From positions 274,436 through 338,435 of the IMG/VR virus record IMGVR_UViG_3300032334_001259: a DNA stretch of 64,000 bases, one strand, 5' to 3'. This document shows, one piece after another, positions 10,377 to 25,613 of this stretch. Every line of letters starts with the position of its first letter. Positions within the stretch are counted from its first letter, which is position 1. The notes beneath the pieces are model-generated. The model had not been told where the DNA came from. It ran no database searches and worked only from the letters and a program-made list of their open reading frames with translations. A program made the position numbers and the translations under genes.

Positions 10377-11429
10377 TTGTATAGCGTTTACCAACATTGG
10401 GACAAACTTAAAACGTGTGTAGTTGGTCAAAGTTATCCACCAGAATTTTATAGTTATATTACTAATCCCCGTGTTCGCAACGTTATGGAACGTATTGCCA
10501 TTGAGACAGAAGAAGACTATCAAAAATTAATTACATTATTAAAAAGTTTTGATGTTAAAATATTACGTCCTGAATTGAAAGATTCAATTGAATTTTATAA
10601 AATTGAAAATAAAAAATACTCACCTCCACCAATGAATCCACGTGATGATTCTGGCATGTTTGGAAATACTTTTTACATCAACAACCATTTTGATTTTTAT
10701 ACTAACATTATTAAAGATATACAAAATACTAATACAGTAATACAAGGTAAAAATATTAACACAGCCTCAATAACAAGAATAGGCAAAGATTTGTATTTTG
10801 GAACACCATCTGAAAAAGATTTATACAAATTTATTGAACCTAAGTTTGCACATAAAGAAAAATTTTTAAAACAAAAAGAAAAAATTTTAAAACAACATAT
10901 GGTAAAACAAACAGAGAATTTTCCATCTTATAGATGTCATGTTGTTAAAAGTGAAGGACACATTGATGGATGTTTTTGTCCAGTTGTTCCAGGTCTTATT
11001 GTAAGTTTATATAATGTTCAAACTTACAGTAAATCATTTCCTAAATGGGAAGTTATATATTTGCCAAATCAAAGTTTTAATGTAATTGAGTCTTTTAGAA
11101 AACTAAAAAATAAAAATAATGGTAAATGGTGGATACCAGGTGAAGAATTAAATGATGATTTAACTGATTTTATTGAATCATGGTTAAATCATTGGGTAGG
11201 ATATGTTGAAGAAACAGTTTTTGATGTTAATATGTTGGTAATTGATAAAAAAAATGTAGTTTGTAACAACTACAACAAAACTGTGTTTGATGCTTTTGAT
11301 AGGCATGGTATAACACCTCATGTAATCAATTTTAGACATCGTTATTTTTGGGATGGTGGTCTACATTGTATTACAAGCGATTTAGACCGTGATGGTGTTA
11401 TGGAAGATTATTTTCCAGAAAGACTTTGA
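10377..11429 (+). CDS. amidinotransferase (glycine/inosamine-phosphate family)
   Basis: WDKLKTCVVG, PRD, GHIDGCF, DVNML, GGLHCIT catalytic Cys. Confidence 0.85.
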   Translation: MYSVYQHWDKLKTCVVGQSYPPEFYSYITNPRVRNVMERIAIETEEDYQKLITLLKSFDVKILRPELKDSIEFYKIENKKYSPPPMNPRDDSGMFGNTFYINNHFDFYTNIIKDIQNTNTVIQGKNINTASITRIGKDLYFGTPSEKDLYKFIEPKFAHKEKFLKQKEKILKQHMVKQTENFPSYRCHVVKSEGHIDGCFCPVVPGLIVSLYNVQTYSKSFPKWEVIYLPNQSFNVIESFRKLKNKNNGKWWIPGEELNDDLTDFIESWLNHWVGYVEETVFDVNMLVIDKKNVVCNNYNKTVFDAFDRHGITPHVINFRHRYFWDGGLHCITSDLDRDGVMEDYFPERL

Positions 11430-11887
11430 TATTCATTATATAAATCATAATAAGCATCGCTTACTTGTTGCGGTGTAATACCAGCATGACGAAATCCATT
11501 TAAGATAGACCTTACATAACTCATACTTGGTAAATCACCATCTAAACTTTCACGTGCTACAGGTGTCATATAATATACCCATGCTTCATAACGTTTTCCA
11601 CCACTTATAACTGGAACAGTTTTACGACCATAAAAACGTGGGTAACCTTCAACTGCATCTAACTCACGAATATAATCAGTTGGCAATTCCCAAAGAACAC
11701 CATCTACACTGCTACCACCACGTTCATAAACATTTGCAAATCTTGCAAATTCATAAGCATAATTTTGTAGCACTGCAGGTCCAATAAATTTAGCACCAGG
11801 CATCATTTGTGGATCAGTAAGCATACCATAAGCGAAGTAATAAATTGGTTCACCACCTGCTTCTGTAATAATATCTTTTACTTGCAT
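11408..11887 (-). CDS. gamma-glutamylcyclotransferase (GGCT/AIG2-like)
   Basis: YYFAYG, VDGVLW, LDAVEGYP, AWVYYM. Confidence 0.85.
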   Translation of the reverse strand: MQVKDIITEAGGEPIYYFAYGMLTDPQMMPGAKFIGPAVLQNYAYEFARFANVYERGGSSVDGVLWELPTDYIRELDAVEGYPRFYGRKTVPVISGGKRYEAWVYYMTPVARESLDGDLPSMSYVRSILNGFRHAGITPQQVSDAYYDLYNEYQSLSGK

Positions 11888-11890
11888 ATG

Positions 11891-12289
11891 TTATTTATTG
11901 CGGTCTTTCCAGACTTCATCATTGGCAATGGGTTGCAAAAAATGTATTAGTGCACCTTCCATTGCACTTAACTCAGTTTCTTTTTGCAGTGGAATATAAT
12001 ATGTTTTCCAAAATTCAGTAGGATAATTAGAATTTTCCAATAAAGTTTTCCAACCTTCTGGCATGTAGATATTTTTATTACCAATAGTTTTTTGATAGTG
12101 CATATCTTGACGGGTTCTAATATTACCTTTGCCTATATAGACAATATCAGTATTATTATGAACAATAATATAAACACCACGCATTTTTTGTCTTGGTATT
12201 TTACGCCAATCTAAAAAAGATATTTCTTTTATTTCACAATCAATATTAAAAAAATCAGAGCATTTTTTTACTGTATCTAATATTTTCAT
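11891..12289 (-). CDS. GIY-YIG domain protein
   Basis: GVYII...VYIGKG..R and E..LI..LQP..N. Confidence 0.7.
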   Translation of the reverse strand: MKILDTVKKCSDFFNIDCEIKEISFLDWRKIPRQKMRGVYIIVHNNTDIVYIGKGNIRTRQDMHYQKTIGNKNIYMPEGWKTLLENSNYPTEFWKTYYIPLQKETELSAMEGALIHFLQPIANDEVWKDRNK

Positions 12290-12303
12290 AAATCACCTGT
12301 TAA

Positions 12304-12380
12304 TGGCGATCTCACGTGGACTCGAACCACGACTCTGCCGCTTAGAAGGCGGCCGCTTTGTCCAGTTAAGCTATGAGACC
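12304..12380 (-). tRNA. tRNA-Arg(TCT)
   Basis: Cloverleaf GGTCTCA...GCCGC-CTTCTAA-GCGGC...GGTTCGAGTCC...TGAGATCGCCA. Confidence 0.93.
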
Positions 12381-12737
12381 ATCTAAATTAAATTCATCTT
12401 CCAAATATATTTTATCTACTTTTTGTATAAAGCTATTTGATAATCTTTTTGGTATAATTGTTTTACATATTCTTATACTAACATCATGTGTTATTTTGTC
12501 AACTGCATTATTATGTCTTTGATCAATTACTAAACATAAAGTTTTACTAGCCTTATATATTTTACTAAAAGTTGCCACACGGTTAGTAATGTATTCACTA
12601 TAACCTACTTGAATTACTCCACCTTTGTAGGGTGTGTCTTGTGATACTTCAAACTCATCAATAACTTTTAGATTTGTATCTTGACGAAGTAATTGTGAAA
12701 TTTTTTCTATATCTTCAACAAGAAATAAAATTTTCAT
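12366..12737 (-). CDS. hypothetical protein; stop codon inside tRNA-Arg
   Basis: Start overlaps mtnN stop; last codons GLIA* are the tRNA 5' end. Confidence 0.6.
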   Translation of the reverse strand: MKILFLVEDIEKISQLLRQDTNLKVIDEFEVSQDTPYKGGVIQVGYSEYITNRVATFSKIYKASKTLCLVIDQRHNNAVDKITHDVSIRICKTIIPKRLSNSFIQKVDKIYLEDEFNLDGLIA

Positions 12738-13267
12738 ACTAATATTTCTAAAAATTTTTCCGCACCCTTGTGCATATTTTCTTTCCAGTGTGCACTTGCA
12801 TCTTCATCTGCAAAATCAGTCATGTATTTGTAGCATTCAAATTGTTTATTAAATCTTTTACATACTTTTGCAATAGCATATGCTTCCATATCAACAGCGT
12901 CAGTTAATAATTCAGGTTTAGATTTTACAAAGTTATCACCAGTGCTCAATGTGAACACACTATCATTCAGAACAATAGGACCACCATCATCTTCAAATGG
13001 TGTATAACCTAACTGTGTAAGTGGTCTTGTATCCATATCACGTTGATAAACAGTTCCAATATTGATTAACCGTCCAATAATATCTTTATTAAGTGCACCC
13101 GCTGTTCCATAGTTTATAATTTTAGAACAATTAGGATCTAATGCACAAATCTTCGTTGCGGCAATAGTTGCATTTATTTTTCCAACACCAGTATAAACTA
13201 TGCTTATACCAAGTGAATCAAACTTAATTGGAAATTCTGGTTCAAGTGCAACTAATATGTAAATCAT
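12734..13267 (-). CDS. mtnN: MTA/SAH nucleosidase (PNP_UDP_1 family)
   Basis: GVGKINAT, GTAGAL, STGDNFV, VDMEAYAIA, TDFAD. Confidence 0.85.
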   Translation of the reverse strand: MIYILVALEPEFPIKFDSLGISIVYTGVGKINATIAATKICALDPNCSKIINYGTAGALNKDIIGRLINIGTVYQRDMDTRPLTQLGYTPFEDDGGPIVLNDSVFTLSTGDNFVKSKPELLTDAVDMEAYAIAKVCKRFNKQFECYKYMTDFADEDASAHWKENMHKGAEKFLEILV

Positions 13268-13281
13268 AATAAAAAAAATAA

Positions 13282-13367
13282 TGGCGGAGCGTATAGGAAT
13301 CGAACCTATTCAACCTTTCGGTTGTACACATTAGCAGTGTGCTGCATTACCGGCCTGCCCACGCTCC
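13282..13367 (-). tRNA. tRNA-Ser(GCT)
   Basis: GGAGCGT acceptor, CTGCTAA loop, long variable arm CAACCGAAAGGTTG, GGTTCGATTCC, GCCA end. Confidence 0.93.
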
Positions 13368-14062
13368 ATTATTTTACTTATATCATCCTTTTTCCATACT
13401 GTCAACTTATTTTTAAACTGTTGCCATTTACAACGGTCTAAATCTGTTTCATAACCCTTAACTTCTAAATACCCACCCAATTCTTCAACATAAAAGTCTG
13501 GAGTATAGTGACTTATTTTACCAGATAAATTTACATAAGCAAATCTTTCAGTGTTTCTTTTCCAATTCCAATTTTGGGAATCCATATATTGTGCAGCTTT
13601 AAGTTCCCAAGTTCCATCTAACAAAACTTCACCAGCAATAGGACTAATGTATTTTATTTTTTTGCATCTACCCGCTTTTGGCATCCATCCAGTTTCATAT
13701 CTTGATAAAATAATTTCTCTATGCCTGTCTCTAAATTTTTGTTTTTTTTCTTCGCTAAAAGTATGCCAATTTGTTTTTCCTAAATTTGCATTACGTAATT
13801 TTTCTTTTTGAATTATAGCACCTTGCGGTCCAAATATTTCATCGTATGTTTTTCCTTTAAGACTTGTTCCATTCGATGAACCTTTAGGATGTCCATTTTT
13901 CCAATAATTATTGCCTAAATCTTTTCTTAAATTTTTTATTTTTGAACGATTTATTTCTTTCATTCCATTACAGGAACTTGTAGATTTACAACAACAATTT
14001 TTTCCATTTTTTAATTTGTATTTTGCTTCTGTTCCGCAACCATAATCACATAAATCTGTCAT
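13331..14062 (-). CDS. putative homing endonuclease, PD-(D/E)XK with basic DNA-binding N-terminus
   Basis: CDYGCG N-terminus, KGKTYDEIFG, GTWELK, YTPDFYV..YLEVKGY. Confidence 0.75.
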   Translation of the reverse strand: MTDLCDYGCGTEAKYKLKNGKNCCCKSTSSCNGMKEINRSKIKNLRKDLGNNYWKNGHPKGSSNGTSLKGKTYDEIFGPQGAIIQKEKLRNANLGKTNWHTFSEEKKQKFRDRHREIILSRYETGWMPKAGRCKKIKYISPIAGEVLLDGTWELKAAQYMDSQNWNWKRNTERFAYVNLSGKISHYTPDFYVEELGGYLEVKGYETDLDRCKWQQFKNKLTVWKKDDISKIMERGQAGNAAHC

Positions 14063-14110
14063 ATAATTATTTATACAAAATAATTAAAAAGGTGCTTTTA
14101 ACCTCTAAAT

Positions 14111-14184
14111 TGGTAGGCGATGACAGAATCGAACTGCCGTAGCCGCCGTGTAAAAGCGGAGTTTTACCATTAAACTAATCGCCC
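14111..14184 (-). tRNA. tRNA-Val(TAC)
   Basis: CCGCT-TTTACAC-GGCGG anticodon arm, AGTTCGATTCT T-arm, ACCA end. Confidence 0.9.
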
Positions 14185-14205
14185 CAATAGTTTATATATA
14201 TCATA

Positions 14206-14793
14206 TTATCCAATTTTGTCAACTATTATTTTAAATAATTTTTCTGCCATTATTTCATGTGCAATTTCATCAGGATGACCATCAGGCAGTTTATGTGGAT
14301 ATGTTATGCTACACATGTTTTCACTATTAAACCAAATATAATTGTTGTCAATATTTTGACAGTAATGGTTAATAGGCATTACATCAAAGAATACATAAGG
14401 AACTTTATTGTGATTAAGATATGCAGAAAAAAGTTTTACTTGATTTATGAACTTTTCATAATAATATAATTCATCATAATAATCATGCCAGAATATATTT
14501 TCAAACTCTGTTAAACCACGGCGATTTGGAATGGTTGTAAATTTTTTACCAGTTTTATTATCTTTAAATTCTACACGACTTGGCTGTGTAAATCCGCAGA
14601 CAACAAAGCTATTATGTAAATCTTTTTCAATTATACTTTGTATAATATGTTCATTACCCATGCCCTCTCGTGCAAGATTAATGACACTTAAGTTTAATTT
14701 TTCAGCCAGCAAATACGGCCAAGAATTAATTGCGTTCTTTAATCCATATCCACTGGTAAAACTACAACCACTACATATTAATTTTGAAAACAT
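14206..14793 (-). CDS. SGNH/GDSL-like protein
   Basis: GCSFTSG, NLAREGMGN, DGHPDEIAH. Confidence 0.7.
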   Translation of the reverse strand: MFSKLICSGCSFTSGYGLKNAINSWPYLLAEKLNLSVINLAREGMGNEHIIQSIIEKDLHNSFVVCGFTQPSRVEFKDNKTGKKFTTIPNRRGLTEFENIFWHDYYDELYYYEKFINQVKLFSAYLNHNKVPYVFFDVMPINHYCQNIDNNYIWFNSENMCSITYPHKLPDGHPDEIAHEIMAEKLFKIIVDKIG

Positions 14794-15587
14794 TCAACAA
14801 TCTTTGGTAATATAAGTTGTAACCAATCAATATGTGCATTGTGACCAGGATGATTACCACATTTTGGATAATCTTTTGCCCATTCGTTAAATGCTGCATC
14901 ACGATACCAATGAGTCCAGTCTAGATCATATAATCCACTATTGATAATATCATTTGGCTGTGGTTTAAAAAGTTCGTCACTAGCACTGCAAAAGAAATAC
15001 GGTATGTTTCTTTGTTTACAAAACATTTCTAGAAACATCATTTCTTTTAATGAATTATAATTATGATAGCTGTAATCACCAGTTACTTTATAAAAACTGT
15101 CACTTGCATGTACAATTCCAATTTCATTTAATTTATTATGTTGTTCAAGAAAAAATTTTCTTTGTTTTTCATCTAATCCGTTTGGGAAAAATTCCATCTT
15201 TTCATCAAAAGATAAACCATGCCATGCGTTAAAATTTATCCAATAATCGTCAATATCAAAACGTGCTGCAACAATTGGATTTTTAACTATAGTATTGTAT
15301 GGGTGCATGTTGCGAATTCGTATTTCACTGCGATGAGTGTATGTCCACATAACCGCAACACATAATTCTTTATCTTTATTATCATTAATTGCTTTTATAA
15401 TACGGCGGCTAATAGTATTATTTGCACCACCTGGTTTAGCAACACAAATATATTCCATATTATACTGCCTTGCTAAAAGAGCACTCCAAGTTTGTTGACT
15501 TGGAGTGTGTTCTGTGCTACTAAATTTATCATCACCTAGTTCACTTCCCCAAGTGAAACTATCACCGCCTGCAATAAGGGTTGGCAT
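14778..15587 (-). CDS. SGNH/GDSL-like protein
   Basis: GDSFTWG, AKPGGAN, NHPGHNAH. Confidence 0.7.
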   Translation of the reverse strand: MPTLIAGGDSFTWGSELGDDKFSSTEHTPSQQTWSALLARQYNMEYICVAKPGGANNTISRRIIKAINDNKDKELCVAVMWTYTHRSEIRIRNMHPYNTIVKNPIVAARFDIDDYWINFNAWHGLSFDEKMEFFPNGLDEKQRKFFLEQHNKLNEIGIVHASDSFYKVTGDYSYHNYNSLKEMMFLEMFCKQRNIPYFFCSASDELFKPQPNDIINSGLYDLDWTHWYRDAAFNEWAKDYPKCGNHPGHNAHIDWLQLILPKIVECFQN

Positions 15588-16201
15588 TAGTCACCTAATA
15601 CTGAACGTGCTTTTTCCCAAAGATGTGTACGTTCTTCAAGACCAATGGTTCCACCATTAATAATCTTTGTGCACTTTACAATGTCACCAGTATCAGCTAC
15701 TTCATTGCAACCATTTTGTTGAAAGAACCAACCAGCACTACGTGCTGCACCTTCTGGTGTAGCAAGATAATCACTGTTTTCTACAAGGTCCATGCCTAAT
15801 GCTTCACCACATGCAGTGTAGTTATTCTTACCAGTTAACTGAATTAAACCACGACCACGAAAACGGAAACCATCGCCGCTGTGTTCATCACCATTACCCA
15901 TACGTGAAGCATAAACACGATTAGCAATCTTTTCTGGTTGCTTTGCAAAATCATTTGGATCTACATCACGGAAATATTTTGGAAATATCTTTGTAAGTGT
16001 TTCTGCTTTGTAGTTTAAATTTTCACTTACAGCACTGAACATACCACTTTCATGTGCACACTGTGCAAGAAACATAGCACAACGAGCGGGTGTATTAATT
16101 TCAAATTCATGCATTGCTTCATTAAGTGCATCACAATATTTCTCTAAATTCTCACCTTTTGCTTGTGGAAAAATTTCTTGTAGTTGTTCAAAAGTTGCCA
16201 T
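15587..16201 (-). CDS. GH19 chitinase-like endolysin
   Basis: FLAQCAHESG, FRGRGLIQLTGKNNY, TKIINGG..GLEER. Confidence 0.92.
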   Translation of the reverse strand: MATFEQLQEIFPQAKGENLEKYCDALNEAMHEFEINTPARCAMFLAQCAHESGMFSAVSENLNYKAETLTKIFPKYFRDVDPNDFAKQPEKIANRVYASRMGNGDEHSGDGFRFRGRGLIQLTGKNNYTACGEALGMDLVENSDYLATPEGAARSAGWFFQQNGCNEVADTGDIVKCTKIINGGTIGLEERTHLWEKARSVLGD

Positions 16202-16254
16202 TTTATATTTCCTTTTTGATTGTTATCAGTATTTACCATTCACCAACCTTCATA

Positions 16255-16260
16255 TAAATA
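16255..16260 (+). promoter_or_regulatory. T4-late-like promoter box (TA)TAAATA, 5 nt before ATG
   Basis: TATAAATA-TCATT-ATG; same spacing at 22622, 23540, 31681(-), 14068(-). Confidence 0.65.
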
Positions 16261-16265
16261 TCATT

Positions 16266-17147
16266 ATGTGTGTTATAGTTGCAAAATATTTTGATAATGT
16301 AGGTTGGGTTGGTGTAAAAAATCGTGATCGCAACTATGTTCCTGATTTAAGTTTTCGTAAAAAGAAAAATAAAAATACAGAAGTATTATATTTTTGGGAT
16401 GATATTACACAATACTGTGAAGGCATGAATGACAGCGGAGTTTGTGTGTTATCTGCAAGCCTTATGGTGCTAGATGATGAAAAAGAAATCACTGTTCGCA
16501 CCAAGACACCAAGCAAAGATGGCGTAAAGATTCAAAAGGCATTGCGACTAACTGATATTAAAGCAGTAGCAATGAGTTTAATTAAACAAAAGCTACCAGG
16601 ATGCACAATTATATTTGATCGTGAAACTTGTTATCTACTTGAAGGTGCATGGGCACCTGGTGGATATGAAGATAAAGATTACAAATATAAGATAGAAGAA
16701 ATACCACATGACGAAACTGTTGCAAGAACTAATCACGGCGTATGGTTAAAGTGGGCAGGATATCAATATAGCAGTGATGACAGTGAAACTGCCAGTGCTA
16801 TAAGCAGTCGCAGTCGTTTAATCATTGCAGAACATATTGCAAAAAATGCTGAAACACCTGCACAACTTATTGATTGGTTAACTAAAAAATATGTTGATAA
16901 CTGGCAATTAAATGCACTACGTCTTACAGATGAAAAGAAAATGATGCGAACAACAGCACAACTTATGTTAGTTCCAAAAGAAAATACAATGTTTGTTCGT
17001 CCAATTCAAAGTAATATTACTTTTAATTTTTGGAAACTTAATGGTAGTGATAGTAAACTTTGGGTAGAATTATTAAGTAATCGTGTGCTACGCAGTGGTG
17101 AAGATGATCCAAGTATTCCTACTAATTTAGGTCATATCACAGACTAA
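16266..17147 (+). CDS. Ntn-hydrolase-like protein (N-terminal Cys)
   Basis: MCVIV...KNRDRNY, EGMNDSG, RTNHG, SRSR. Confidence 0.65.
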   Translation: MCVIVAKYFDNVGWVGVKNRDRNYVPDLSFRKKKNKNTEVLYFWDDITQYCEGMNDSGVCVLSASLMVLDDEKEITVRTKTPSKDGVKIQKALRLTDIKAVAMSLIKQKLPGCTIIFDRETCYLLEGAWAPGGYEDKDYKYKIEEIPHDETVARTNHGVWLKWAGYQYSSDDSETASAISSRSRLIIAEHIAKNAETPAQLIDWLTKKYVDNWQLNALRLTDEKKMMRTTAQLMLVPKENTMFVRPIQSNITFNFWKLNGSDSKLWVELLSNRVLRSGEDDPSIPTNLGHITD

Positions 17148-17392
17148 ACTGGATGCCACATCATACCCCAATCACTATCTACCCAACGTAGGGTAAAGTG
17201 AGTTGCATCTTCTGCTTTATCAAATTCAAAAACGACTTGAAATTTTCCTACAAGCGTTCCATCTTCAAAATATGAAAGTTCTGGATACTTAAAAACATAA
17301 TTATTTTCAAGACAAAATCGTATCATTTCATCAATCCAATAATCTTTAGCTAAAACATGTTGATGTGGAATGTGAACTTTTACTTCTGTCAT
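17144..17392 (-). CDS. small protein, C-terminal 'F..RW' family
   Basis: FEFDKAEDATHFTLRW. Confidence 0.6.
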   Translation of the reverse strand: MTEVKVHIPHQHVLAKDYWIDEMIRFCLENNYVFKYPELSYFEDGTLVGKFQVVFEFDKAEDATHFTLRWVDSDWGMMWHPV

Positions 17393-17408
17393 TTTAAAAC
17401 TTTTTAAT

Positions 17409-17485
17409 TGGTGCCCACGGTCGGATTTGAACCGACACTGTGGCGATTTTAAGTCGCCTTTCTCTACCTGTTGGAATACGTGGGC
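17409..17485 (-). tRNA. tRNA-Leu(TAA) with short variable loop
   Basis: GCCCACG acceptor, GGCGA-CTTAAAA-TCGCC, 5-nt variable region ACAGT, GGTTCAAATCC, ACCA. Confidence 0.88.
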
Positions 17486-17491
17486 ATTAAC

Positions 17492-17908
17492 TTAATCTAC
17501 CACATCCATAGTGGCTTTACCTAATTCTTTATAACCTTTTGCAGTAGGATGGATTTTATCTTTACTCAACCAATCTTTATGTAGTTTAATTGTGCCATCA
17601 TTAAAATCTCTGGCAAGTGCTTCAATATATTCTATGGTTTCAGCACGAGTATCATTAGGTAGTATCCAAATAACATATTGTGCGTCGATACGTTGACGGA
17701 TCAACCAAAGATTTTCATGTGTGTGCATATCTTTAGAATCATTGGTGCTTAAACTTATAATAACAATATTACTTGTCGGAAGTTTTGTGCTGTATGTCCC
17801 AAGAAAATCTTGTGAATTGATACCAACTTTAGCAATAGTCATGCAGTCACGACGAACATCACCAAGACCCTTTGCAATACTGTCACCTATAATCAAACAA
17901 TCTATCAT
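17492..17908 (-). CDS. SGNH/GDSL hydrolase
   Basis: IGDSIA, SLSTND, DKIHPTAKGY. Confidence 0.8.
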   Translation of the reverse strand: MIDCLIIGDSIAKGLGDVRRDCMTIAKVGINSQDFLGTYSTKLPTSNIVIISLSTNDSKDMHTHENLWLIRQRIDAQYVIWILPNDTRAETIEYIEALARDFNDGTIKLHKDWLSKDKIHPTAKGYKELGKATMDVVD

Positions 17909-18469: not shown

Positions 18470-18527
18470 ATGAAACTCTCCATATGTATTTATATAGCGG
18501 CTGGCTTTACTGTCCATTAACTATATA

Positions 18528-18986
18528 TTAACTTTTTTTGACCGTTTTGTCAACTATATTTTTATTTTCTATGAACATTCTATATAATCCAAGTTCACGA
18601 CCAAATGCTTCAATTTCCCAAGGCATGTCCCAATAATTCATATTTGCTTCTTTATAAACTTGCCCCTTATACCGACTTACTTTTTTTCTTTCGTTATATG
18701 ACAATTCACGCTTAACATATTGCTTAACATGAACCATTTCATGTGCAAGAGCAATCAAAATTTTACGTTTGCTAAATGAGGAGTCAACAGTAATAGTATA
18801 TTTTCCACCACCCTCGTTGACACAATATGCTTCGTCACCATGTTTTTTCTGTAGATTGCGTTCAAAGTCAAGCCATAGGTCAACTTTATTTTTTGTTATA
18901 TTAAGATAATCGGCGTAGAACGCCACTGCCCTCTTAATAATATCACGGTTAACATTTTTACATTTACCAGTAATAGTAAGTTGCAT
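18528..18986 (-). CDS. zinc metallopeptidase-like protein (HExxH)
   Basis: LAHEMVHVKQY...PWEIEAFGRE. Confidence 0.75.
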   Translation of the reverse strand: MQLTITGKCKNVNRDIIKRAVAFYADYLNITKNKVDLWLDFERNLQKKHGDEAYCVNEGGGKYTITVDSSFSKRKILIALAHEMVHVKQYVKRELSYNERKKVSRYKGQVYKEANMNYWDMPWEIEAFGRELGLYRMFIENKNIVDKTVKKS

Positions 18987-19035
18987 AGTGAACTCCCCAG
19001 ACACTAACAAAATATAAACATAAATTTGGGCTTTG

Positions 19036-19497
19036 TCAAGCCCAAATTATCTCATCCCAACCTTCTTTCAAATCAGGAACTTCCAAGTTGTCAATCATAG
19101 ACTTCATAACATCCTTTGGAATGCTCTTGCCTACACGACTATCAAGACGGCGTTGCAATTCCTCTGGTTCAGGAGTTGCAAAGAATACACAAATCTTACG
19201 CCATTCTTTTGGAATACGACCAAGTTTAACCTTACGACCTTTGGCAGTCGTGTTGGTTTGATCCCATATAAGGGTCTTGTCCAAGTTGATAGCACTTTGC
19301 ACTTGACCATCCACAAACTTTTGTGCATAGCCAATAGCACGGCTGAAAATCTCGTTATAGGTCTTGTTGCTTTGTGCTGCAACACGGTCAATATAATCAT
19401 CGCTTGATGCAATAATTACATCATCAAAGTCTTGGTTCTTTATCCATGTTGACTTACCAGAACCTGGTACACCAACTAACATATAAAGCGTGGTCAT
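19036..19497 (-). CDS. polynucleotide kinase-like P-loop protein (PseT kinase half)
   Basis: GVPGSGKST, SSDD, WDQTN...R, RRLDSR..K.IP. Confidence 0.8.
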   Translation of the reverse strand: MTTLYMLVGVPGSGKSTWIKNQDFDDVIIASSDDYIDRVAAQSNKTYNEIFSRAIGYAQKFVDGQVQSAINLDKTLIWDQTNTTAKGRKVKLGRIPKEWRKICVFFATPEPEELQRRLDSRVGKSIPKDVMKSMIDNLEVPDLKEGWDEIIWA

Positions 19498-19736
19498 TTT
19501 AACACCTTGATTTCACCAATAAATTCTACTTCACTTTCAGTTTCAATCCAAACCTTTGCACCACAACTTAATGGTTTATCTGGACTGTAAACAACCTTGC
19601 TTGGTCCATGAATAGCAACCTCGTGAGCGTAAGTATTCTTACGACCTTGTTTGACCGTAAGAGTAGGCTCACGCTCACCAGTTTTACTATTGCGTTTAAT
19701 CACATGTTGATTTACATGTATAATAGATTTAGTCAT
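19494..19736 (-). CDS. conserved hypothetical phage protein
   Basis: IHVNQHVIKRN...YSPDKPLSCGAKVWIET. Confidence 0.7.
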   Translation of the reverse strand: MTKSIIHVNQHVIKRNSKTGEREPTLTVKQGRKNTYAHEVAIHGPSKVVYSPDKPLSCGAKVWIETESEVEFIGEIKVLK

Positions 19737-19888
19737 ATTGTATTCCACTTATCTATAATTGCTGTTACAATCAAATAGATAAAAGAAGTAATTCCAAGAA
19801 TAAAGAACGCTTCAACCGTATTATATTTTAATGCAGTAAGAATACCATCTGCAATAAAAACTGCCAACACACTTGTCCAAAAGTTCAT
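19733..19888 (-). CDS. small membrane protein
   Basis: Two hydrophobic segments; 4-nt overlaps with neighbours. Confidence 0.55.
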   Translation of the reverse strand: MNFWTSVLAVFIADGILTALKYNTVEAFFILGITSFIYLIVTAIIDKWNTI

Positions 19889-20355
19889 ATGAAATTTCCT
19901 TCTGCTACTTGTAACACACGAACACCACACGCACGGATTGCATCAACAACCTGCTGACGATCATCAAACCATAGATAAGGCTCGCCATAATCCTTGCGGA
20001 TTTGTTCAAGCAATTCTACCTTGACGATGCTATCCTTGCGATAGTCTTTCTCTGCTCGCATATACAGTTTGTCCCAATAGAAATCGTTATCACGCAACCA
20101 CTTTTCAGTAACTTCACGATTTTCTTCACCACGTCCACTACAAAATAAACGAATAATTTTATCTTCATACTTAGGGTGGTTCACATTCAAAAATGTCAGT
20201 GCATCCCAGATAAACTTAATATCAGCATGGACTGTATCGTTAGCCATGCCAGCGTTCCAAGCTGCCCAATTTTTAGGCTTACTTGCAACATACTGACGAC
20301 GATGGTCAACGTTAGCCATAGTGCCATCAATGTCAAAAACGATAACTTTGTTCAT
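19885..20355 (-). CDS. HAD polynucleotide 3'-phosphatase (PseT phosphatase half)
   Basis: FDIDGT, SGR, LYMR..D.RKDSIVK, FDDRQQVV, LQVAEGNF. Confidence 0.85.
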   Translation of the reverse strand: MNKVIVFDIDGTMANVDHRRQYVASKPKNWAAWNAGMANDTVHADIKFIWDALTFLNVNHPKYEDKIIRLFCSGRGEENREVTEKWLRDNDFYWDKLYMRAEKDYRKDSIVKVELLEQIRKDYGEPYLWFDDRQQVVDAIRACGVRVLQVAEGNFI

Positions 20356-20465
20356 AATTGCCTCCATCTAACCCAATATAACACAAAAATAGTGATTGTC
20401 AAGGGTTATTTTTCACTTGACAAAGCCTAAAAATGTGTTATTTTACAGGTATATAGGAGAACCAT

Positions 20466-20681
20466 ATGAATCAACGTGCTGGTAAAACCCATAAAGCTGC
20501 CCTTGTGGACAGTGATAAAATCCGTTATACTGACCTCGTAGAGTTTTGTAAACGTGCAAGGACTGATCTTGAAAGCGAAGGTGACGGTGATGCCGCCCTA
20601 CGTTTTGAAATCCTTGAAGACTGGCTACGTAATGAGTTTCGTGGTAATTTCAAGTATAATTCAAAAATGATTGGGTTATGA
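20466..20681 (+). CDS. hypothetical protein
   Basis: AGGAGA SD and upstream TTGACA promoter. Confidence 0.7.
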   Translation: MNQRAGKTHKAALVDSDKIRYTDLVEFCKRARTDLESEGDGDAALRFEILEDWLRNEFRGNFKYNSKMIGL

Positions 20682-21355
20682 TGAAAAATATATTAGTTTG
20701 TGGTGATAGTTTTTGCGCAAATTATGATAAAAAATATTCTTGGACTAACATTTTAGCTGAATTGCTAAATGTTAATGTAAAATCAGTAGGAATACGTGGA
20801 TGTAGCAATTATTTAATTTATAATCAATTTTTAAAATTTAATTCTGATGAATATGATTATGTGATCGTAATAAAGACTGCAGAAAGCAGAATTCCAATAG
20901 TAAACAAACATCCTCATATGTGCGCCACTCTTGATTGGAAAAAAATAAATTTTGATAGAATCAAATTTAAAAATTATGAAAAAGCCTTAGAATATTATTA
21001 CTATTACTATTATGATTTAGATTTTGTAAAATGGACAAGCTATAATGCGTTTAGAAGTATTGAAAATTTACAATTAAAAAATCAAAAAATTATTTGGATT
21101 AATGCCTTTGAAAGTTCGTATGTTCATGAAAAAAAAGCAAATAATATAATTGTAAATGGTTACTTATCTTATGTAAGCACAATGTCTATTGATAATAAAC
21201 ATATCACAAATTATCATGGTGATCACGACATAAATGGAAGTGCAAATCATCTCTCACCAATAGACAATCATAATTTGGCAATTTTTTTAAAAGAACTTAT
21301 AAATGATAATAATGGGAATAATGATTTAAATAAACATAATTGGTCTTGGATGTAA
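20678..21355 (+). CDS. SGNH/GDSL-like protein
   Basis: CGDSF, GCSN, ANHLS. Confidence 0.65.
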   Translation: MMKNILVCGDSFCANYDKKYSWTNILAELLNVNVKSVGIRGCSNYLIYNQFLKFNSDEYDYVIVIKTAESRIPIVNKHPHMCATLDWKKINFDRIKFKNYEKALEYYYYYYYDLDFVKWTSYNAFRSIENLQLKNQKIIWINAFESSYVHEKKANNIIVNGYLSYVSTMSIDNKHITNYHGDHDINGSANHLSPIDNHNLAIFLKELINDNNGNNDLNKHNWSWM

Positions 21356-21409
21356 AAATAAAAAAATTAAAACTTTTATTTACAGTTACAATATTATATA
21401 ATTACCTTT

Positions 21410-22624
21410 ATGAATAATTGCAAACCACTTCGTAAATGTCTTTGCTGTGATAGTAATGACCTCAAACTTACATTAGATTTAGGTTCTCAACCTCTTGCCA
21501 ATAGTTTCAAGGCAACAGCAATAGAACGTGAAGAAACATATCCACTTGCTGTAAATTACTGTCCACATTGCCATCATCTGCAATTAACCCATGCAGTTGA
21601 TGCTAATATAATTTTTAAAGATTATGTATATGTAAGTGGAACATCACTTACTATGCAAGAATATTTTAAGTGGTTTGCTGCATTTGTTATGGAATATTTT
21701 CAAGATGTTCCGCCAAAGCGTGTGCTTGAAATTGGCTGTAATGATGGCACACAGTTAAACTATTTTAAGAAATATGGATTAGAAACGTGGGGCATTGATC
21801 CTGCGGAAAACATTTATCCAATCAGCAGCAAAAATCATAACATTATTTGTGACTTTTTATCTCAACATGCTTTGGATAAACTCAAGCGTCCAGTAGATAT
21901 TATATACGCACAAAATGTTTTTGCGCATCAAGACAATCCACAACAATTCCTTGAACTTTGCAAATCTGTGATGAACCCTAACACACTGTTGTTCATACAG
22001 AATAGTCAAAGTGATATGATTCAAAATAATGAATTTGATACAATCTATCATGAACATAGAAATTTCTTTAGCATTAGTAGCCTTAATACCCTTGCTAACC
22101 ATGTTGGACTACACCTTATTGATGTAGTAAAGGGTACAATTCACGGTGGTAGTAATATCTTTGTGTTCAGCATAGATGATGAATGTCCTGCACGTGTCAA
22201 GGGTTATATGGATTGGGAACGTATCCAAGGATTATATAATTACAAAACCTATCAGAATTGGGCAGATGGTGCTAAACGTACAGTTAATGATTTAAGCATT
22301 GTGTTAGATGCACAGCGCAAAGCACACAATCGTGTGATTGTAGGTTATGGTGCGCCAGCCAAAGGTAATACGCTATTGAACTTTGGTAATATATCACTTG
22401 ATTTTATTATAGATGATAATCCATTAAAGCAACACAAATATACACCTGGTATGAGTATTCCTGTTGTTCCTATTGAACACTTACAGAAGTATGTTGGTGT
22501 AGACATTTGTTTTGTGCCGCTTGCATGGAACTTTTTTGATGAAATTGTAGATCGTCTTAAAAAGGTTCGTAATAATAGTGGTGATGTATTTGTAAGATAC
22601 TTTCCAAGTATCCAGATACAATAA
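21410..22624 (+). CDS. NDP-sugar C-methyltransferase (TcaB9/NovU-like)
   Basis: CxxC...LDLGSQPLAN...CxxC, EIGCNDG, FDTIYHEH, HGGS, GYGAPAKGNTLL, LAWNF. Confidence 0.9.
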   Translation: MNNCKPLRKCLCCDSNDLKLTLDLGSQPLANSFKATAIEREETYPLAVNYCPHCHHLQLTHAVDANIIFKDYVYVSGTSLTMQEYFKWFAAFVMEYFQDVPPKRVLEIGCNDGTQLNYFKKYGLETWGIDPAENIYPISSKNHNIICDFLSQHALDKLKRPVDIIYAQNVFAHQDNPQQFLELCKSVMNPNTLLFIQNSQSDMIQNNEFDTIYHEHRNFFSISSLNTLANHVGLHLIDVVKGTIHGGSNIFVFSIDDECPARVKGYMDWERIQGLYNYKTYQNWADGAKRTVNDLSIVLDAQRKAHNRVIVGYGAPAKGNTLLNFGNISLDFIIDDNPLKQHKYTPGMSIPVVPIEHLQKYVGVDICFVPLAWNFFDEIVDRLKKVRNNSGDVFVRYFPSIQIQ

Positions 22625-22632
22625 ATATCTAC

Positions 22633-23529
22633 ATGCGAATTAGTGAAATTATTGTTGAAGCACCAACTGATGTAAGTCGTCGTGGATTTCTTAAAGGATT
22701 AGCAAGCATTGCTGCATCTACTGCAATGCCACAAAATGCTGTTGCAAAAATATTAAAGGCAGTTCCTAAATCACAAATTGAAATATTAGACGATCTTTTT
22801 AAAAATGTACATCCAATTGTACTAGACACCGTAGGCAGTGAATATGGCAGGGTGGGAGTACACGGAGAACACGCTATAAGTGCTTTTACTAACTCAGAAT
22901 ATGATGCTTTACATAGATTGGTAAGACCTCTTTATAAAGAACAAGGTTTTGCAACTGAACGTGATGCAGTAAATGCATTAAAAAAAATAGCAACTATGAG
23001 CAGCAAAACTACTAATGAATATTACAAGGTATTTGAATACCTACTTGGAAGACCACTTGAAGTAAGAAAATTAGAAAACATACTGGCATCACATGGCACC
23101 AATGTAGACAGTTTTTTTGGTCAAATGATGAAGAATGAACCATTTGAAGAAGCGTTTATGCAATTATCAAATGAGGCTTATATGAATATTGGTGGCACAC
23201 GTTATTTTGAACCTATCGCAAATTTAAAACCGCTACCACCAAATTGGGCAACGGCACTTGGACAGTCAGTAAAACGATTTGCAAATAATGCAGGACAAGT
23301 AGCAAGATTTACAGGTAAAAACTATCTTGATAAAAAACTTCCTGATTTATCCCCTCAACAACTTGACCAGAGAAACGCAACTCAAGACAGGGTAGATAAA
23401 GAAAAAAAAGAACCACAAAAACCAAAAGAACTTGAAAAACCAAAAGATGATGAAAAGAAAATTACATCATATGGCGGTAGTGCAACTGGTAAGTTTGTAA
23501 AACCAATTGCTGCAAAAGTTAACGCTTAA
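22633..23529 (+). CDS. hypothetical late protein with Tat-like motif
   Basis: MRISEIIVEA then SRRGFLKGLASIAA; TAAATA box. Confidence 0.7.
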   Translation: MRISEIIVEAPTDVSRRGFLKGLASIAASTAMPQNAVAKILKAVPKSQIEILDDLFKNVHPIVLDTVGSEYGRVGVHGEHAISAFTNSEYDALHRLVRPLYKEQGFATERDAVNALKKIATMSSKTTNEYYKVFEYLLGRPLEVRKLENILASHGTNVDSFFGQMMKNEPFEEAFMQLSNEAYMNIGGTRYFEPIANLKPLPPNWATALGQSVKRFANNAGQVARFTGKNYLDKKLPDLSPQQLDQRNATQDRVDKEKKEPQKPKELEKPKDDEKKITSYGGSATGKFVKPIAAKVNA

Positions 23530-23550
23530 TAATATTCCATAAATATCTGT

Positions 23551-24264
23551 ATGCGTTTTACACAATTCAAACCAATAATTCTCGAAGGTGGAAATATGTT
23601 TAAGGGAACAACATCCTATGATCAGGCTGTTGTTCCACAAGTATTAAAGATAATTAATGATGCGCTAAGTGGTGCAAGACTTAAAGTTACGCCAGTTGGT
23701 AGTGGTGCAAATCCTGTCAAGGGTAAAATCAGTAACGATTTTGATGTTATGACAGATGAAGATGCTGTTAAGGCTTTCTTTAAAACCAATGATGCCAAGG
23801 AAGCACGTAAGAAATTAGCAGAATATCTTAAGAATCTTGGATTTCAAACTGCACAAAGTGGAATAATTGTGCATGTGTTGGTTCCTGTAGCCAATATGGG
23901 TGTGCAAGCTGATATTATGGTAACACCACAAGCAGATGCAATTGCCAAGTTTCATACTCATAATATTCCACAAAATAGCCCATTCAAAGGTAAGAACAAA
24001 GTTCTGACCATGGGAGCAATCGCTAAGGCCAAAGGTTATATGTTTAGCCCATGGCAAGGGTTGTTTAAACGCACACCAGATGGTAAAAAAGGTGAACTTG
24101 TAAGTAATGATATTGAAACAGTTGCTAAAGTATTACTTGGCAATTCCGCAACTGCCGCTGACTTGGGTAGTGTAGAAAGCATTCTTAAAAAACTTCCACG
24201 TGCAGATGCAGATAAACTTCTCGCAACTCTACGTGCTGATCCAAATTGGGAAGAACTTAAATGA
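23551..24264 (+). CDS. hypothetical late protein, possible Pol-beta-type nucleotidyltransferase fold
   Basis: VGSG...SNDFDVM and QADIM (GS, DxD, third D). Confidence 0.5.
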   Translation: MRFTQFKPIILEGGNMFKGTTSYDQAVVPQVLKIINDALSGARLKVTPVGSGANPVKGKISNDFDVMTDEDAVKAFFKTNDAKEARKKLAEYLKNLGFQTAQSGIIVHVLVPVANMGVQADIMVTPQADAIAKFHTHNIPQNSPFKGKNKVLTMGAIAKAKGYMFSPWQGLFKRTPDGKKGELVSNDIETVAKVLLGNSATAADLGSVESILKKLPRADADKLLATLRADPNWEELK

Positions 24265-25613
24265 GAGCCTCGCAGTTTATTTCAGAGTCTAGAGGCATGT
24301 TTGGTCGTAAAAAGGGCGATCTGTATATAAATGACAATGGTCAAACAGCAACGTTTAATCATGCTGAAATGTTTCCAAATACTAAAACAAATGATGCTTA
24401 TAAAGATCATCCTACTGCTTTAATAGAAATAAATCGTATTGAAGCAAGAGAAGGTTCAAAAATTAGTTGGGTTAATGCTGAAAAACAAAATACCAATGCT
24501 TTTGCTATAGTTTATATGGATAGTGATGATGGCAGTAAAATGCTATGGGGTAGATGGTATAACGTTGTGCCAGCAAATGTAGATTCTACTTGGAAAAATG
24601 ATCAATTACCACAAGGTTGGGTATGGAGTAGTAAAACTGCTACAAAAGCAAAAAGTGGTATGACCCCACAAGATTTGATTAAAACTGAAAAAACATTTAA
24701 TAGTTCCGAAGAACTGCTACAAACTATTTCAAATAATGGTGCAAGTCCTGAAATTATGGAAGGATTGCAGATGGTTAGTGCAGGTTCAAAAGTTGTTGTA
24801 TTTAAAGGATTAGGTGATAAACTAACTAGTGTTCGTGATCATCTTGGTGAAATTATAACACCCCTTGCCCTCATTAGTGAAGTTATCAATGATACAAATG
24901 CAATTAATGCTAAAAAAGATATTTTAAAAACAGAATATAGTAGTTGTGCTATAAGATTTCCACAAAATAAAAATAATAATCTTGTTGATAGTGAATTTAT
25001 TGCTCCAAGTGGTGAAATTTTAGGAATAAGCACTAAAGGTAATAAAGGTGCAGATGCAAGTATTATTAATATATGGAATGCAATGAACAAACAAGAAAAT
25101 GTTTCTCTTGCAAAAAAATACAAGTATGCAGTAGACGTTGTTAGAATTATTGCAGATAACGGTCAAAAATTAGGTCCGCTTGTTCTTGGTGAACAATTAG
25201 GCATCATTGACAAATATTTAAAAGATGAAATATTACATCATATTGATAATAAAACAAATAAACCAGAAGAAATGAGTGAAAATGCTCAAAGATTGTTTAT
25301 TGCTTATAAAAGTGAAAGCGATACACCTGGTTTCAATATTGGATATGTATTATTAGCAAATTGCGCAAAAAAAGTTGCAGAAGAAATTAATAAAGATAAA
25401 AGATTTGAAGAAGCGTGTCGTGCTTTCTTAAATCAAGCAAGTATCATACAAGTTTATACTGATGCTAAAGCATCTGGCAATGATGTTCAAATTACAGGAT
25501 TTAGAAGTGTATATCCACCAAAATTTGAAGGTTCAATTAAACTTGAGGCCGGTAAAACTTATATGAGTACCGGCATCAAGGGTAAATTTGTTTTTAAAAT
25601 TGGTAAAGGTTAA
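24261..25613 (+). CDS. hypothetical late protein, possible PD-(D/E)XK nuclease fold
   Basis: LVDS...ISTKG; MRASQFISE N-terminus. Confidence 0.45.
   Translation: MRASQFISESRGMFGRKKGDLYINDNGQTATFNHAEMFPNTKTNDAYKDHPTALIEINRIEAREGSKISWVNAEKQNTNAFAIVYMDSDDGSKMLWGRWYNVVPANVDSTWKNDQLPQGWVWSSKTATKAKSGMTPQDLIKTEKTFNSSEELLQTISNNGASPEIMEGLQMVSAGSKVVVFKGLGDKLTSVRDHLGEIITPLALISEVINDTNAINAKKDILKTEYSSCAIRFPQNKNNNLVDSEFIAPSGEILGISTKGNKGADASIINIWNAMNKQENVSLAKKYKYAVDVVRIIADNGQKLGPLVLGEQLGIIDKYLKDEILHHIDNKTNKPEEMSENAQRLFIAYKSESDTPGFNIGYVLLANCAKKVAEEINKDKRFEEACRAFLNQASIIQVYTDAKASGNDVQITGFRSVYPPKFEGSIKLEAGKTYMSTGIKGKFVFKIGKG

What the first reader, a model, noticed from the sequence alone, without database searches (positions are those of the whole stretch)
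11408..25613. T4-style capsid-targeting N-termini on enzymes: candidate injected proteins
Seen: MQVKDIITE/A (GGCT), MRISEIIVE/A, MRFTQFKPIILE/G and MRASQFISE/S, all behind or co-transcribed with TAAATA boxes. Established: T4 internal proteins carry a ~10-aa capsid-targeting sequence (MKTYQEFIAE-type) cut after Glu by the prohead protease. Inference: a GGCT, a putative nucleotidyltransferase and a putative nuclease are packaged and injected with the DNA.
Basis: partly seen in the sequence, partly recalled or inferred. Interest (0 to 1): 0.6.

Follow-up and report, generated by a model that had tools for sequence, protein, structure and literature searches.

The report
Capsid-targeting tags on jumbo-phage enzymes
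An uncultured 338-kb freshwater phage distantly related to T4 puts a short T4-like "pack me into the head" peptide on at least a dozen late proteins, including enzymes, so it probably ships them into the next host cell with its DNA; one of them also carries a bacterial export signal behind the tag.

Summary
All four ORFs exist with the quoted N-termini. The strict motif M-[RK]-x-x-[EDQ]-[FI]-[IL]-x-E starts 7 of 379 genes, against 0 of 1960 internal Met and 0.007 expected by shuffling. The genome is a complete 338-kb PA5oct/Rak2-like jumbo phage. It encodes a T4 gp21-type prohead protease, a gp23-type capsid protein and a gp55-like late sigma factor. TAAATA behaves as a late -10 box.

The tag is portable. 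Distant homologues of the GGCT, the 237-aa enzyme and a DUF6267 protein start directly at the enzyme core, and close ones carry the tag. T4's own tag shares the E-F-I-x-E core.

The 237-aa protein is a minimal family-X (Pol beta-like) nucleotidyltransferase. The 450-aa protein is only weakly restriction-endonuclease-like.

New points:
- At least 13 proteins in the genome are tagged.
- The proposed cut site in the 237-aa protein lies in its conserved core.
- The 298-aa protein has a twin-arginine (Tat) export signal right behind the tag. Across its family this leader is the most conserved part.
- The 298-aa gene is a 902-bp cassette inserted at the promoter/start junction.

Packaging, cleavage and injection remain inferred. 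There is no virion proteome.

The parts
11408..11887 (-). GGCT/AIG2-like enzyme, 159 aa. The tag MQVKDIITE is encoded at 11861-11887, followed by linker AGGEP and then the core IYYFAYGM.
   Evidence: PF06094 at 54 bits and phrog_2520. About 30 related loci keep M-[KR]-x-x-[ED]-[IV]-[IL]-x-E-A-G. Distant ones start MIYYFAYGM. GenBank phage homologues align only from residue 16-17.
11892..11897 (-). TAAATA late-promoter-like box, 4 nt upstream of the GGCT ATG.
22622..22627 (+). TAAATA box, 5 nt upstream of the 298-aa gene. It overlaps the stop codon of the upstream C-methyltransferase gene.
22633..23529 (+). 298-aa protein with a two-part leader. The tag MRISEIIVE is encoded at 22633-22659. The twin-arginine (Tat) signal covers residues 14-38 (nt 22672-22746). 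The C-terminal motif is SYGGSATGKFVKP.
   Evidence: TIGR01409 scores 18.3 bits, above its 16.7 cut-off. PF10518 scores 19.8, below its cut-off. This is the only Tat consensus in the proteome. R16 and R17 are invariant and E9 is at least 90% conserved across 11 family members of 23-89% identity.
22638..23538 (+). About 902-bp cassette carrying the 298-aa gene. It is absent from syntenic relatives and flanked by duplicated ATAAATATCTnnATGCG junctions.
   Evidence: blastn against L007, L004 and L005 shows the methyltransferase gene abutting the 237-aa gene, with a 17-nt overlap that maps to both junctions. The junctions are aligned.
23540..23545 (+). TAAATA box, 5 nt upstream of the 237-aa gene.
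23551..24264 (+). 237-aa minimal family-X-like nucleotidyltransferase (palm plus thumb). The shortened tag MRFTQFKP is fused to the core IILEGGN.
   Evidence: AF2 pLDDT is 91.8, with residues 1-13 below 50. Foldseek finds Pol lambda/beta at E 2e-7. VIA gives Z 12.2 for Pol beta, 11.0 for TdT and 11.0 for ASFV Pol X. G50, S51, D63, D65 and D121 are invariant. Homologues either carry a full tag such as MRSREFITESK or start at MILLEGGN.
24261..25613 (+). 450-aa protein. The tag MRASQFISE is encoded at 24261-24287. Residues 11-123 form a small beta-barrel. Residues about 170-450 form a possible PD-(D/E)xK nuclease domain. The start overlaps the stop of the 237-aa gene.
   Evidence: AF2 pLDDT is 89.4, with residues 1-8 below 50. 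VIA gives Z 5.2 for HhaI and 5.0 for MspI, followed by SwaI, HincII and EcoRV. Foldseek finds nothing below 1e-3. E197, D243, S257 and K259 are invariant. About 110 homologues of 26-99% identity nearly all carry the tag, and two start at the core.

Best explanation
The short N-terminal peptide (consensus M-R-x-x-[E/D/Q]-[F/I]-[I/L]-x-E) is the capsid-targeting propeptide of a PA5oct/Rak2-like jumbo phage of the T4 superfamily.

Proposed mechanism:
1. The proteins are made late, from TAAATA promoters.
2. The tag binds them to the scaffolding core of the assembling prohead.
3. The gp21-type prohead protease removes the tag after the Glu.
4. The mature proteins stay in the head with the DNA and are ejected into the next host.

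The cargo in the window is a GGCT-like enzyme, a minimal Pol X-like nucleotidyltransferase, a possible PD-(D/E)xK nuclease and a Tat-signal protein. Elsewhere in the genome at least nine more proteins carry the tag: a GNAT, a DUF6267 protein and several small basic proteins. A 2845-aa multi-domain protein may carry a variant of it.

Shown here: the motif, its enrichment, its portability, the protease and the other head genes, the promoter context and the enzyme folds. Inferred: binding to the core, cleavage, retention in the head and ejection.
For: - Motif enrichment. It is also seen in five related genomes, with zero hits for the reversed control pattern.
- T4 carries MKTYQEFIAE twice and MKTFKEFIKE once, with the same core. 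The T4 literature reports that 10 residues suffice for targeting and that cleavage follows Glu at L/I-x-E (PMC9026906; PMC3012670).
- A Peptidase_S77 protease is 33% identical to T4 gp21, and the GEVDHP and GVSSRG stretches align with LGELNHP and GVSSRG of T4 gp21. Whether these hold the catalytic His and Ser is recalled from memory, not tested.
- The protease starts MNNLLIE, like T4 gp21's MNEPQLLIE. The capsid protein starts MSQELIE and has VLE/LAE sites where T4 gp23 is cut.
- Portability: three enzyme families occur with and without the tag. The tag swaps between 89%-identical proteins (MRISEIIVE versus MRAHEFAIE) while the rest is unchanged. A cassette has inserted at the promoter/tag junction.
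- The tag is disordered in the AF2 models.
- Selection acts on the protein, not the DNA: Arg is encoded by AGA, CGA and CGT, and Glu by GAA and GAG.
- TAAATA precedes structural-size genes and is 4-fold under-represented elsewhere. A gp55-like sigma factor is present.
- Most mature cargo proteins are basic, with pI 8-9.6.
- PA5oct gp150 starts MKINDIITE and is a mass-spectrometry-confirmed virion protein. Its homologue here sits next to the portal gene.
- Rak2-like heads hold radiation-sensitive internal protein (PMC7247149).
Against: - There is no virion proteome and no RNA data for this uncultured phage. Cleavage and packaging are untested.
- The closest cultured relatives have few such tags: PA5oct 3 pattern hits and Vibrio phage 2.275.O 1 hit. 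Their proteomes therefore cannot be transferred.
- The GGCT tag scores only 4.0 in the independent PSSM, and the 237-aa tag scores below the noise level.
- Cutting the 237-aa protein after Glu12 would remove a residue that is invariant even in untagged homologues.
- The Tat signal on the 298-aa protein points to a periplasmic destination, which capsid targeting alone does not explain.
- The complex prediction of protease with substrate could not be run.
Confidence: 0.75

Rival explanations
1. The shared N-terminus is a by-product of translation initiation. Many late mRNAs here appear leaderless (TAAATA, 5 nt, ATG), and the first codons are constrained at the RNA level for ribosome loading rather than as a protein signal.
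For: 36 genes have TAAATA only 4-7 nt before the ATG. Six tagged genes are among them, and ATAAATATCTnnATG is conserved.
Against: About 30 of the 36 near-leaderless genes have unrelated N-termini, often starting MA. Seven tagged genes have no proximal box or have a Shine-Dalgarno spacing. The codons vary synonymously while the residues are kept. The motif ends in the protease's I/L-x-E site and matches T4's tag.
Confidence: 0.07
2. The tag is a protein signal for something other than the head. It could be a degradation or regulatory tag (an N-degron or protease adaptor site), or a tag for another late assembly or compartment.
For: No direct localisation data exist. The Tat-signal protein shows that at least one tagged protein has another destination encoded.
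Against: The tag resembles the experimentally defined T4 head tag. A gp21-type protease is present whose own N-terminus, and those of the capsid and scaffold proteins, carry L-x-E sites. PA5oct gp150 carries the tag and is in virions.
Confidence: 0.1
3. The tag does target proteins to the prohead core, but the cargo acts only during assembly or is degraded and expelled like scaffold, so nothing functional is injected.
For: In T4 most core proteins are cut to pieces and leave the head (PMC9026906). The acidic 285-aa head-module protein here, which starts MRSQYEQLIE, looks like such a core protein.
Against: A GGCT, a Pol X-like enzyme, a GNAT and a nuclease-like protein have no obvious role in head assembly. 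In T4, proteins bearing the tag (the internal proteins, Alt and foreign fusions) are retained and delivered.
Confidence: 0.08

Closest known systems
[quoted passage not shown]
   Same: - An N-terminal tag of 9-10 residues with the core E-F-I-x-E, cut after Glu by a gp21-family protease.
- Late promoter directly upstream.
- Diverse, fast-evolving, mostly basic cargo.
- One enzyme among the T4 cargo (Alt).
- Tag plus promoter behaving as a recombination cassette. The T-even IP locus precedent is from my own knowledge (Repoila et al. 1994).
   Different: - The tag is one residue shorter and usually starts MR rather than MK.
- There are at least 13 cargo genes, scattered in at least five loci.
- The cargo includes a GGCT, a Pol X-like nucleotidyltransferase, a GNAT, a DUF6267 protein and a nuclease-like protein.
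- One cargo protein has a Tat signal behind the tag.
- The phage is a 338-kb PA5oct/Rak2-like jumbo phage whose capsid protein is only 29% identical to gp23.
Ejection and inner-body proteins of phiKZ-like phages (phiKZ, 201phi2-1, SPN3US)
   Same: A jumbo phage packs many proteins into the head. N-terminal propeptides are removed after Glu by a gp21-related protease (PMC9026906).
   Different: Those phages use a looser S/A/G-x-E site and long propeptides, not a short shared tag. This phage has no sign of that lineage. Its head genes are T4/PA5oct-type.
Phage P1 Dar (defence against restriction) proteins
   Same: Large enzymes packed into the head through N-terminal determinants and delivered with the DNA to act at time zero. 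This rests on my own knowledge and on the titles of PMC9024508 and PMC12810830.
   Different: P1 loading is hierarchical through DarA and Hdf. There is no common short tag and no gp21-type L/I-x-E logic. I did not examine these papers in detail.
ASFV Pol X and other minimal family-X polymerases (for the 237-aa protein)
   Same: A palm-plus-thumb architecture without the 8-kDa and fingers domains. VIA gives Z 11.0 over 161 of 176 residues of ASFV Pol X and 12.2 for the Pol beta palm-thumb. The G-S, D-x-D and D residues are invariant.
   Different: No Pfam or PDB sequence match. The conserved N-terminal I-L-L-E-G-G-N motif is unique to this family. Activity and substrate are unknown.
Bacterial twin-arginine (Tat) signal peptides (for the 298-aa protein)
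   Same: S-R-R-x-F-L-K-G, a mildly hydrophobic Ala/Ser-rich stretch and an A-x-A-type end. The match is above the TIGR01409 cut-off.
   Different: The signal is preceded by a phage head-targeting tag and encoded by a lytic-type jumbo phage. I found no report of such a combination in the paper library.

Membership tests
T4-type CTS cargo (internal / injected head proteins) | N-terminal propeptide of about 10 residues resembling MKTYQEFIAE and ending in (L/I)-x-E | tested here: met
   The T4 reference tags were read from NC_000866. The 237-aa protein has only the first half of the tag.
T4-type CTS cargo (internal / injected head proteins) | The genome encodes a gp21-family (Peptidase S77) prohead protease in a T4-like head gene cluster | tested here: met
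   PF03420 at 90.3 bits. 33% identity to T4 gp21 at E 2e-19, with the GEVDHP and GVSSRG stretches conserved. The gene order is portal, small protein, acidic protein, protease, scaffold, capsid.
T4-type CTS cargo (internal / injected head proteins) | Late expression from a T4-type late promoter | tested here: inconclusive
   The TAAATA box lies 4-7 or 15-21 nt before many structural-size genes and is under-represented elsewhere. A gp55-like ORF is present at E 3.7e-5. No transcript data exist.
T4-type CTS cargo (internal / injected head proteins) | The tag is a portable module, independent of the cargo fold | tested here: met
   Tagged and untagged homologues exist in three families. The tag swaps between near-identical proteins. 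It is disordered in the models.
T4-type CTS cargo (internal / injected head proteins) | The protein is present in virions with an N-terminus starting after the Glu, and is ejected into the host | not testable with these tools
   The phage is uncultured. The only link is that the tagged PA5oct gp150 is annotated as an ESI-MS/MS virion protein.
GGCT / AIG2-like (PF06094) | Domain match above the curated cut-off, with the YGS/M-L and E-G-Y motifs | tested here: met
   54 bits against a cut-off of 22.8, and phrog_2520 at E 3e-20. The motifs FAYGML and AVEGYP were read directly. Activity was not tested.
Family X (Pol beta-like) nucleotidyltransferase | Palm with G-S, D-x-D and D carboxylates, plus the Pol X thumb | tested here: met
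   Sequence-profile membership was not met: there is no Pfam hit.
PD-(D/E)xK nuclease | Restriction-endonuclease-like core fold with a D...(D/E/S)-x-K motif | tested here: inconclusive
   The best Z is 5.2, below the level at which a match can be trusted. Foldseek gives E of 0.08 or worse. E197, D243, S257 and K259 are invariant and fit an MspI/HinP1I-like variant. That parallel is from my own knowledge.
Tat signal peptide | Twin-arginine consensus, h-region and A-x-A end near the N-terminus | tested here: met
   TIGR01409 is above its cut-off. RR is invariant in the family. Pfam PF10518 is just below its cut-off. Export itself cannot be tested here.

The most novel reading that the evidence does not exclude
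The 298-aa family has a two-stage address label: a head-targeting tag followed within 2-6 residues by a Tat signal. The protein would be packed into the capsid, lose the tag and be ejected into the next host's cytoplasm. The host's own Tat machinery would then export it to the periplasm. The phage would thereby deliver a ready-made periplasmic effector, for example for superinfection exclusion or envelope remodelling, before any phage gene is expressed. In addition, the tag plus TAAATA junction acts as a plug-in site for new cargo cassettes.
Probability: 0.3. Interest if true: 0.85.

Novelty: new variant of a known kind. Interest (0 to 1): 0.62.

Why it matters
Proteins that travel inside the capsid act before any phage gene is expressed. 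In T4 and P1 they decide whether the infection survives host defences. If the tag is what it appears to be, the injected arsenal of a whole lineage of uncultured freshwater jumbo phages can be read from sequence alone.

The arsenal is unusual. It includes a GGCT, a minimal Pol X-like polymerase paired with a nuclease-like protein, a GNAT, and possibly a 2845-aa multi-enzyme protein. This gives concrete candidates for new anti-defence or DNA/RNA-repair functions.

It also offers a second natural tag for loading foreign proteins into T4-type heads. The tag-plus-Tat leader, if functional, would be a route for delivering proteins to the periplasm that has not been described.

Tried and rejected
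- DNA and tblastn searches of the 298-, 237- and 450-aa genes against GenBank phages found nothing. Relatives exist only in metagenomes.
- Sequence searches of the PDB gave only noise for these three proteins.
- Foldseek gave no significant match for the 450-aa model.
- The ESM Atlas gave no usable hit for the 298-aa protein.
There is therefore no verdict on protease-tag docking.
- I tried to test whether untagged homologues sit in phages that lack a gp21 protease. This failed because those contigs are fragments only 9-29% complete.
- My first T4 pattern used a variable gap that broke the reading frame and was discarded.
- The PA5oct, RaK2 and phAPEC6 papers contain no mention of a targeting tag or cleavage sites.
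- No RNA runs hold the region, and read laying was not used.
- The exonuclease at 26003-26551, which starts MKHRDIMIDIE, was rejected as a tagged protein. That sequence is the exonuclease's own catalytic motif, and it scores below noise.
Full report
WHAT IS THERE

The window is the last 64 kb of a complete 338,435-bp virus record with direct terminal repeats and 35.5% G+C. Its major capsid protein is 69% identical to that of Pseudomonas phage PA5oct, 67% to Vibrio phage 2.275.O and 62% to Cronobacter phage GAP32. It is therefore a PA5oct/Rak2-like jumbo myovirus of the T4 superfamily. Near-identical DNA occurs in freshwater and aquatic metagenomes.

TAAATA lies 4, 5 and 5 nt upstream of the first three start codons. 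The fourth gene overlaps the stop of the third.

IS IT MORE THAN CHANCE?

- The strict pattern M-[RK]-x-x-[EDQ]-[FI]-[IL]-x-E starts 7 of 379 predicted genes. It occurs at none of 1960 internal Met and on average 0.007 times in shuffled N-termini.
- A looser scan and a scoring matrix built only from 48 tags on other contigs find 11-14 tagged genes.
- Besides the four in the window, the tagged genes are (genome coordinates):
  - a 274-aa protein (20660-21484);
  - four adjacent small proteins, one of them a GNAT (59519-62367);
  - a 117-aa protein (227829-228182);
  - a 245-aa protein (232144-232881);
  - a 133-aa protein (243515-243916);
  - a 379-aa DUF6267 protein (243942-245081).
- A 2845-aa multi-domain protein starts MMTIINSTLKE/A. 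This resembles a tag variant seen in distant homologues of the 450-aa protein (MRDLINILTES). I count it only as possible.
- The equivalent DNA pattern occurs 5-8 times in each of five related genomes and never when read backwards.

WHY IT IS READ AS A HEAD-TARGETING TAG

1. The genome has the machinery. It encodes a Peptidase_S77 protease that is 33% identical to T4 gp21, with the GEVDHP and GVSSRG stretches conserved. The protease sits in the T4 gene order: portal, small protein, acidic protein, protease, coiled-coil scaffold, gp23-type capsid protein.
2. The T4 genome itself has MKTYQEFIAE twice and MKTFKEFIKE once. The core E-F-I-x-E is the same, and the tag here is one residue shorter. According to the T4 literature, the first 10 residues of IPIII suffice for packaging. 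Residues 4 and 7 matter for targeting and residues 8 and 10 for cleavage. T4 gp21 has LIE-9 near its own N-terminus (PMC9026906; PMC3012670). Here the protease starts MNNLLIE and the capsid protein MSQELIE. The capsid protein has VLE and LAE where T4 gp23 has its LTE/A cut.
3. The tag is portable.
   - In the 237-aa family most homologues start MILLEGGN. One clade has MRSREFITESK in front of it. The window's clade has the shortened MRFTQF[KR]P.
   - GGCT homologues either start M-[KR]-x-x-[ED]-[IV]-[IL]-x-E-A-G ahead of IYYFAYGM or start directly at MIYYFAYGM. GenBank phage GGCTs align only from residue 16.
   - Cyanophage homologues of the DUF6267 protein lack the tag.
   - In the 450-aa family nearly all of about 110 homologues, down to 26% identity, keep a tag, with variable spacers. 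Two start at the core.
4. The tag lies outside the folds. Residues 1-13 and 1-8 are the only low-confidence parts of two otherwise confident models.
5. The conservation is at the protein level, because Arg and Glu codons vary.
6. The context is late. TAAATA occurs 193 times against about 750 expected. Half of the copies sit just upstream of an ORF, including structural-size genes. A gp55-like sigma factor is present.
7. In the cultured relative PA5oct, the small protein next to the portal starts MKINDIITE and is annotated as a mass-spectrometry-confirmed virion protein. Its homologue lies at the same place here.
8. Heads of Rak2-like coliphages show a radiation-sensitive internal protein body (PMC7247149).

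WHAT THE CARGO IS

- The 159-aa protein is a GGCT/AIG2-like enzyme (PF06094, 54 bits).
- The 237-aa protein is a minimal family-X nucleotidyltransferase.
  - Foldseek finds Pol lambda/beta at E 2e-7. VIA gives Z 12.2 for the Pol beta palm-thumb, 11.0 for TdT and 11.0 for ASFV Pol X.
  - Other nucleotidyltransferases match only the palm. G50, S51, D63, D65 and D121 are invariant.
- The 450-aa protein has a small beta-barrel (residues 11-123) and a C-terminal part whose best matches are type II restriction enzymes.
  - These matches reach only Z about 5.
  - The invariant E197, D243, S257 and K259 fit a PD-(D/E)xK variant.
  - I regard 'nuclease' as plausible, not shown.
- The Pol X-like and nuclease-like genes overlap and stay paired in a relative at 30-43% identity. 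This suggests that they work together.
- Most mature cargo proteins are basic.

CORRECTIONS AND ADDITIONS

- In the 237-aa protein the proposed cut after Glu12 falls in the I-L-L-E-G-G-N motif. This motif is invariant even in untagged homologues. Either the core's own L-L-E has been co-opted as the cut site, or this protein is targeted without being cut.
- The 298-aa protein was not an 'enzyme' call, and it is the most surprising of the four.
  - Behind the tag comes a textbook Tat signal (S-R-R-G-F-L-K-G, an Ala/Ser-rich stretch, then A-V-A). It scores above the TIGR01409 cut-off and is the only Tat consensus in the proteome.
  - An exhaustive search of 1.84 billion representatives found nine family members at E 0.001 or better. 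In the alignment of 11 members (23-89% identity to the window's protein) the only invariant columns are the two arginines and one glycine. The tag's Glu is at least 90% conserved.
  - Both halves of the leader are therefore under selection.
  - The gene is a 902-bp cassette missing from three syntenic relatives. It is inserted exactly at the ATAAATATCTnnATGCG promoter/start junction, which is duplicated on both sides.

MECHANISM, RIVALS AND LIMITS

The best-supported model is this: late synthesis, tag-mediated capture by the prohead core, removal of the tag after Glu by the gp21-type protease, retention with the DNA, and ejection into the next cell. I give it a confidence of about 0.75.

- The motif, its enrichment and portability, the head machinery and the folds are shown.
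- Capture, cleavage and ejection are inferred from T4.

The rivals are a translation-initiation artefact of leaderless mRNAs, a tag for some other fate, and targeting without delivery. Each explains less of the evidence (see the rival explanations). No virion proteome, transcript data or complex prediction could be obtained.

NOVELTY

The tag system itself is known from T4. The new points are:
- its presence and expansion in an uncultured PA5oct/Rak2-like lineage;
- the enzyme cargo;
- the cassette behaviour at the promoter/tag junction;
- the conserved tag-plus-Tat leader, for which I found no precedent in the paper library.

Noticed in passing
whole genome; in the window e.g. 22622-22627, 23540-23545, 11892-11897: TAAATA is about 4-fold under-represented (193 copies against about 750 expected). 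Its distance to the next ATG is bimodal: 4-7 nt (36 genes, no room for a Shine-Dalgarno sequence, so leaderless or nearly so) or 15-21 nt (46 genes, with a GGAG-like element between). Many of the near-leaderless genes start with Met-Ala.
   Followed up: partly
genome 59519-62367 (locus L056 1519-4367, minus strand): Four adjacent tagged small proteins (117-166 aa), one of them a GNAT. Three share a basic C-terminal motif (S-P-V-x-x-N-S-G, then Arg/Lys). This looks like the T-even internal-protein locus.
   Followed up: partly
genome 234949-243486 (L057 7949-16486, minus strand): A 2845-aa multi-domain protein with a cytidylyltransferase-like N-terminus, two Amidoligase_2 regions and a possible tag variant MMTIINSTLKE/A. 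It resembles the 'polyvalent proteins' proposed to be delivered with phage DNA (my own knowledge).
   Followed up: partly
genome 243942-245081 (L057 16942-18081, minus strand): A tagged DUF6267 protein (379 aa). Untagged homologues in T4-like cyanophages sit next to cytidylyltransferase genes. Here it sits next to the 2845-aa protein, whose N-terminus is cytidylyltransferase-like.
   Followed up: partly
window 19036-19497 and 19885-20367, minus strand: A P-loop kinase (AAA_33/KTI12) and a separate HAD_PNKP phosphatase. Together they would make a split polynucleotide kinase-phosphatase, i.e. an RNA/DNA end-repair function near the tagged genes.
   Followed up: no
window 14206-14793, 14778-15587, 17492-17908, 20678-21355: Four paralogous ORFs with an N-terminal G-D-S / C-S-G-C-S motif that looks SGNH/GDSL-hydrolase-like by eye. 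Only a weak DUF6071 hit was obtained for one of them. The last one (about 20683-21394) is an insertion relative to relative L007.
   Followed up: no
window 25610-25972 and 26003-26551, minus strand; 21410-22624, plus strand: An S-adenosylmethionine decarboxylase, an Rv2179c-like 3'-5' exoribonuclease and a sugar C-methyltransferase-type enzyme flank the tagged operon. The arrangement is conserved in a relative at 43% identity (L069).
   Followed up: no
genome 228182-229135 (L057 1182-2135, minus strand): A TRAP-transporter solute-binding protein (DctP, PF03480) encoded by the phage, apparently without a signal peptide. It lies directly upstream of a tagged 117-aa gene.
   Followed up: no
298-aa family, C-terminus (window about 23460-23529): A conserved C-terminal motif S-Y-x-G-x-A-T-G-K-F-V-x-P-x-x-A is shared by most family members, although the rest of the protein diverges. 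Its function is unknown.
   Followed up: no
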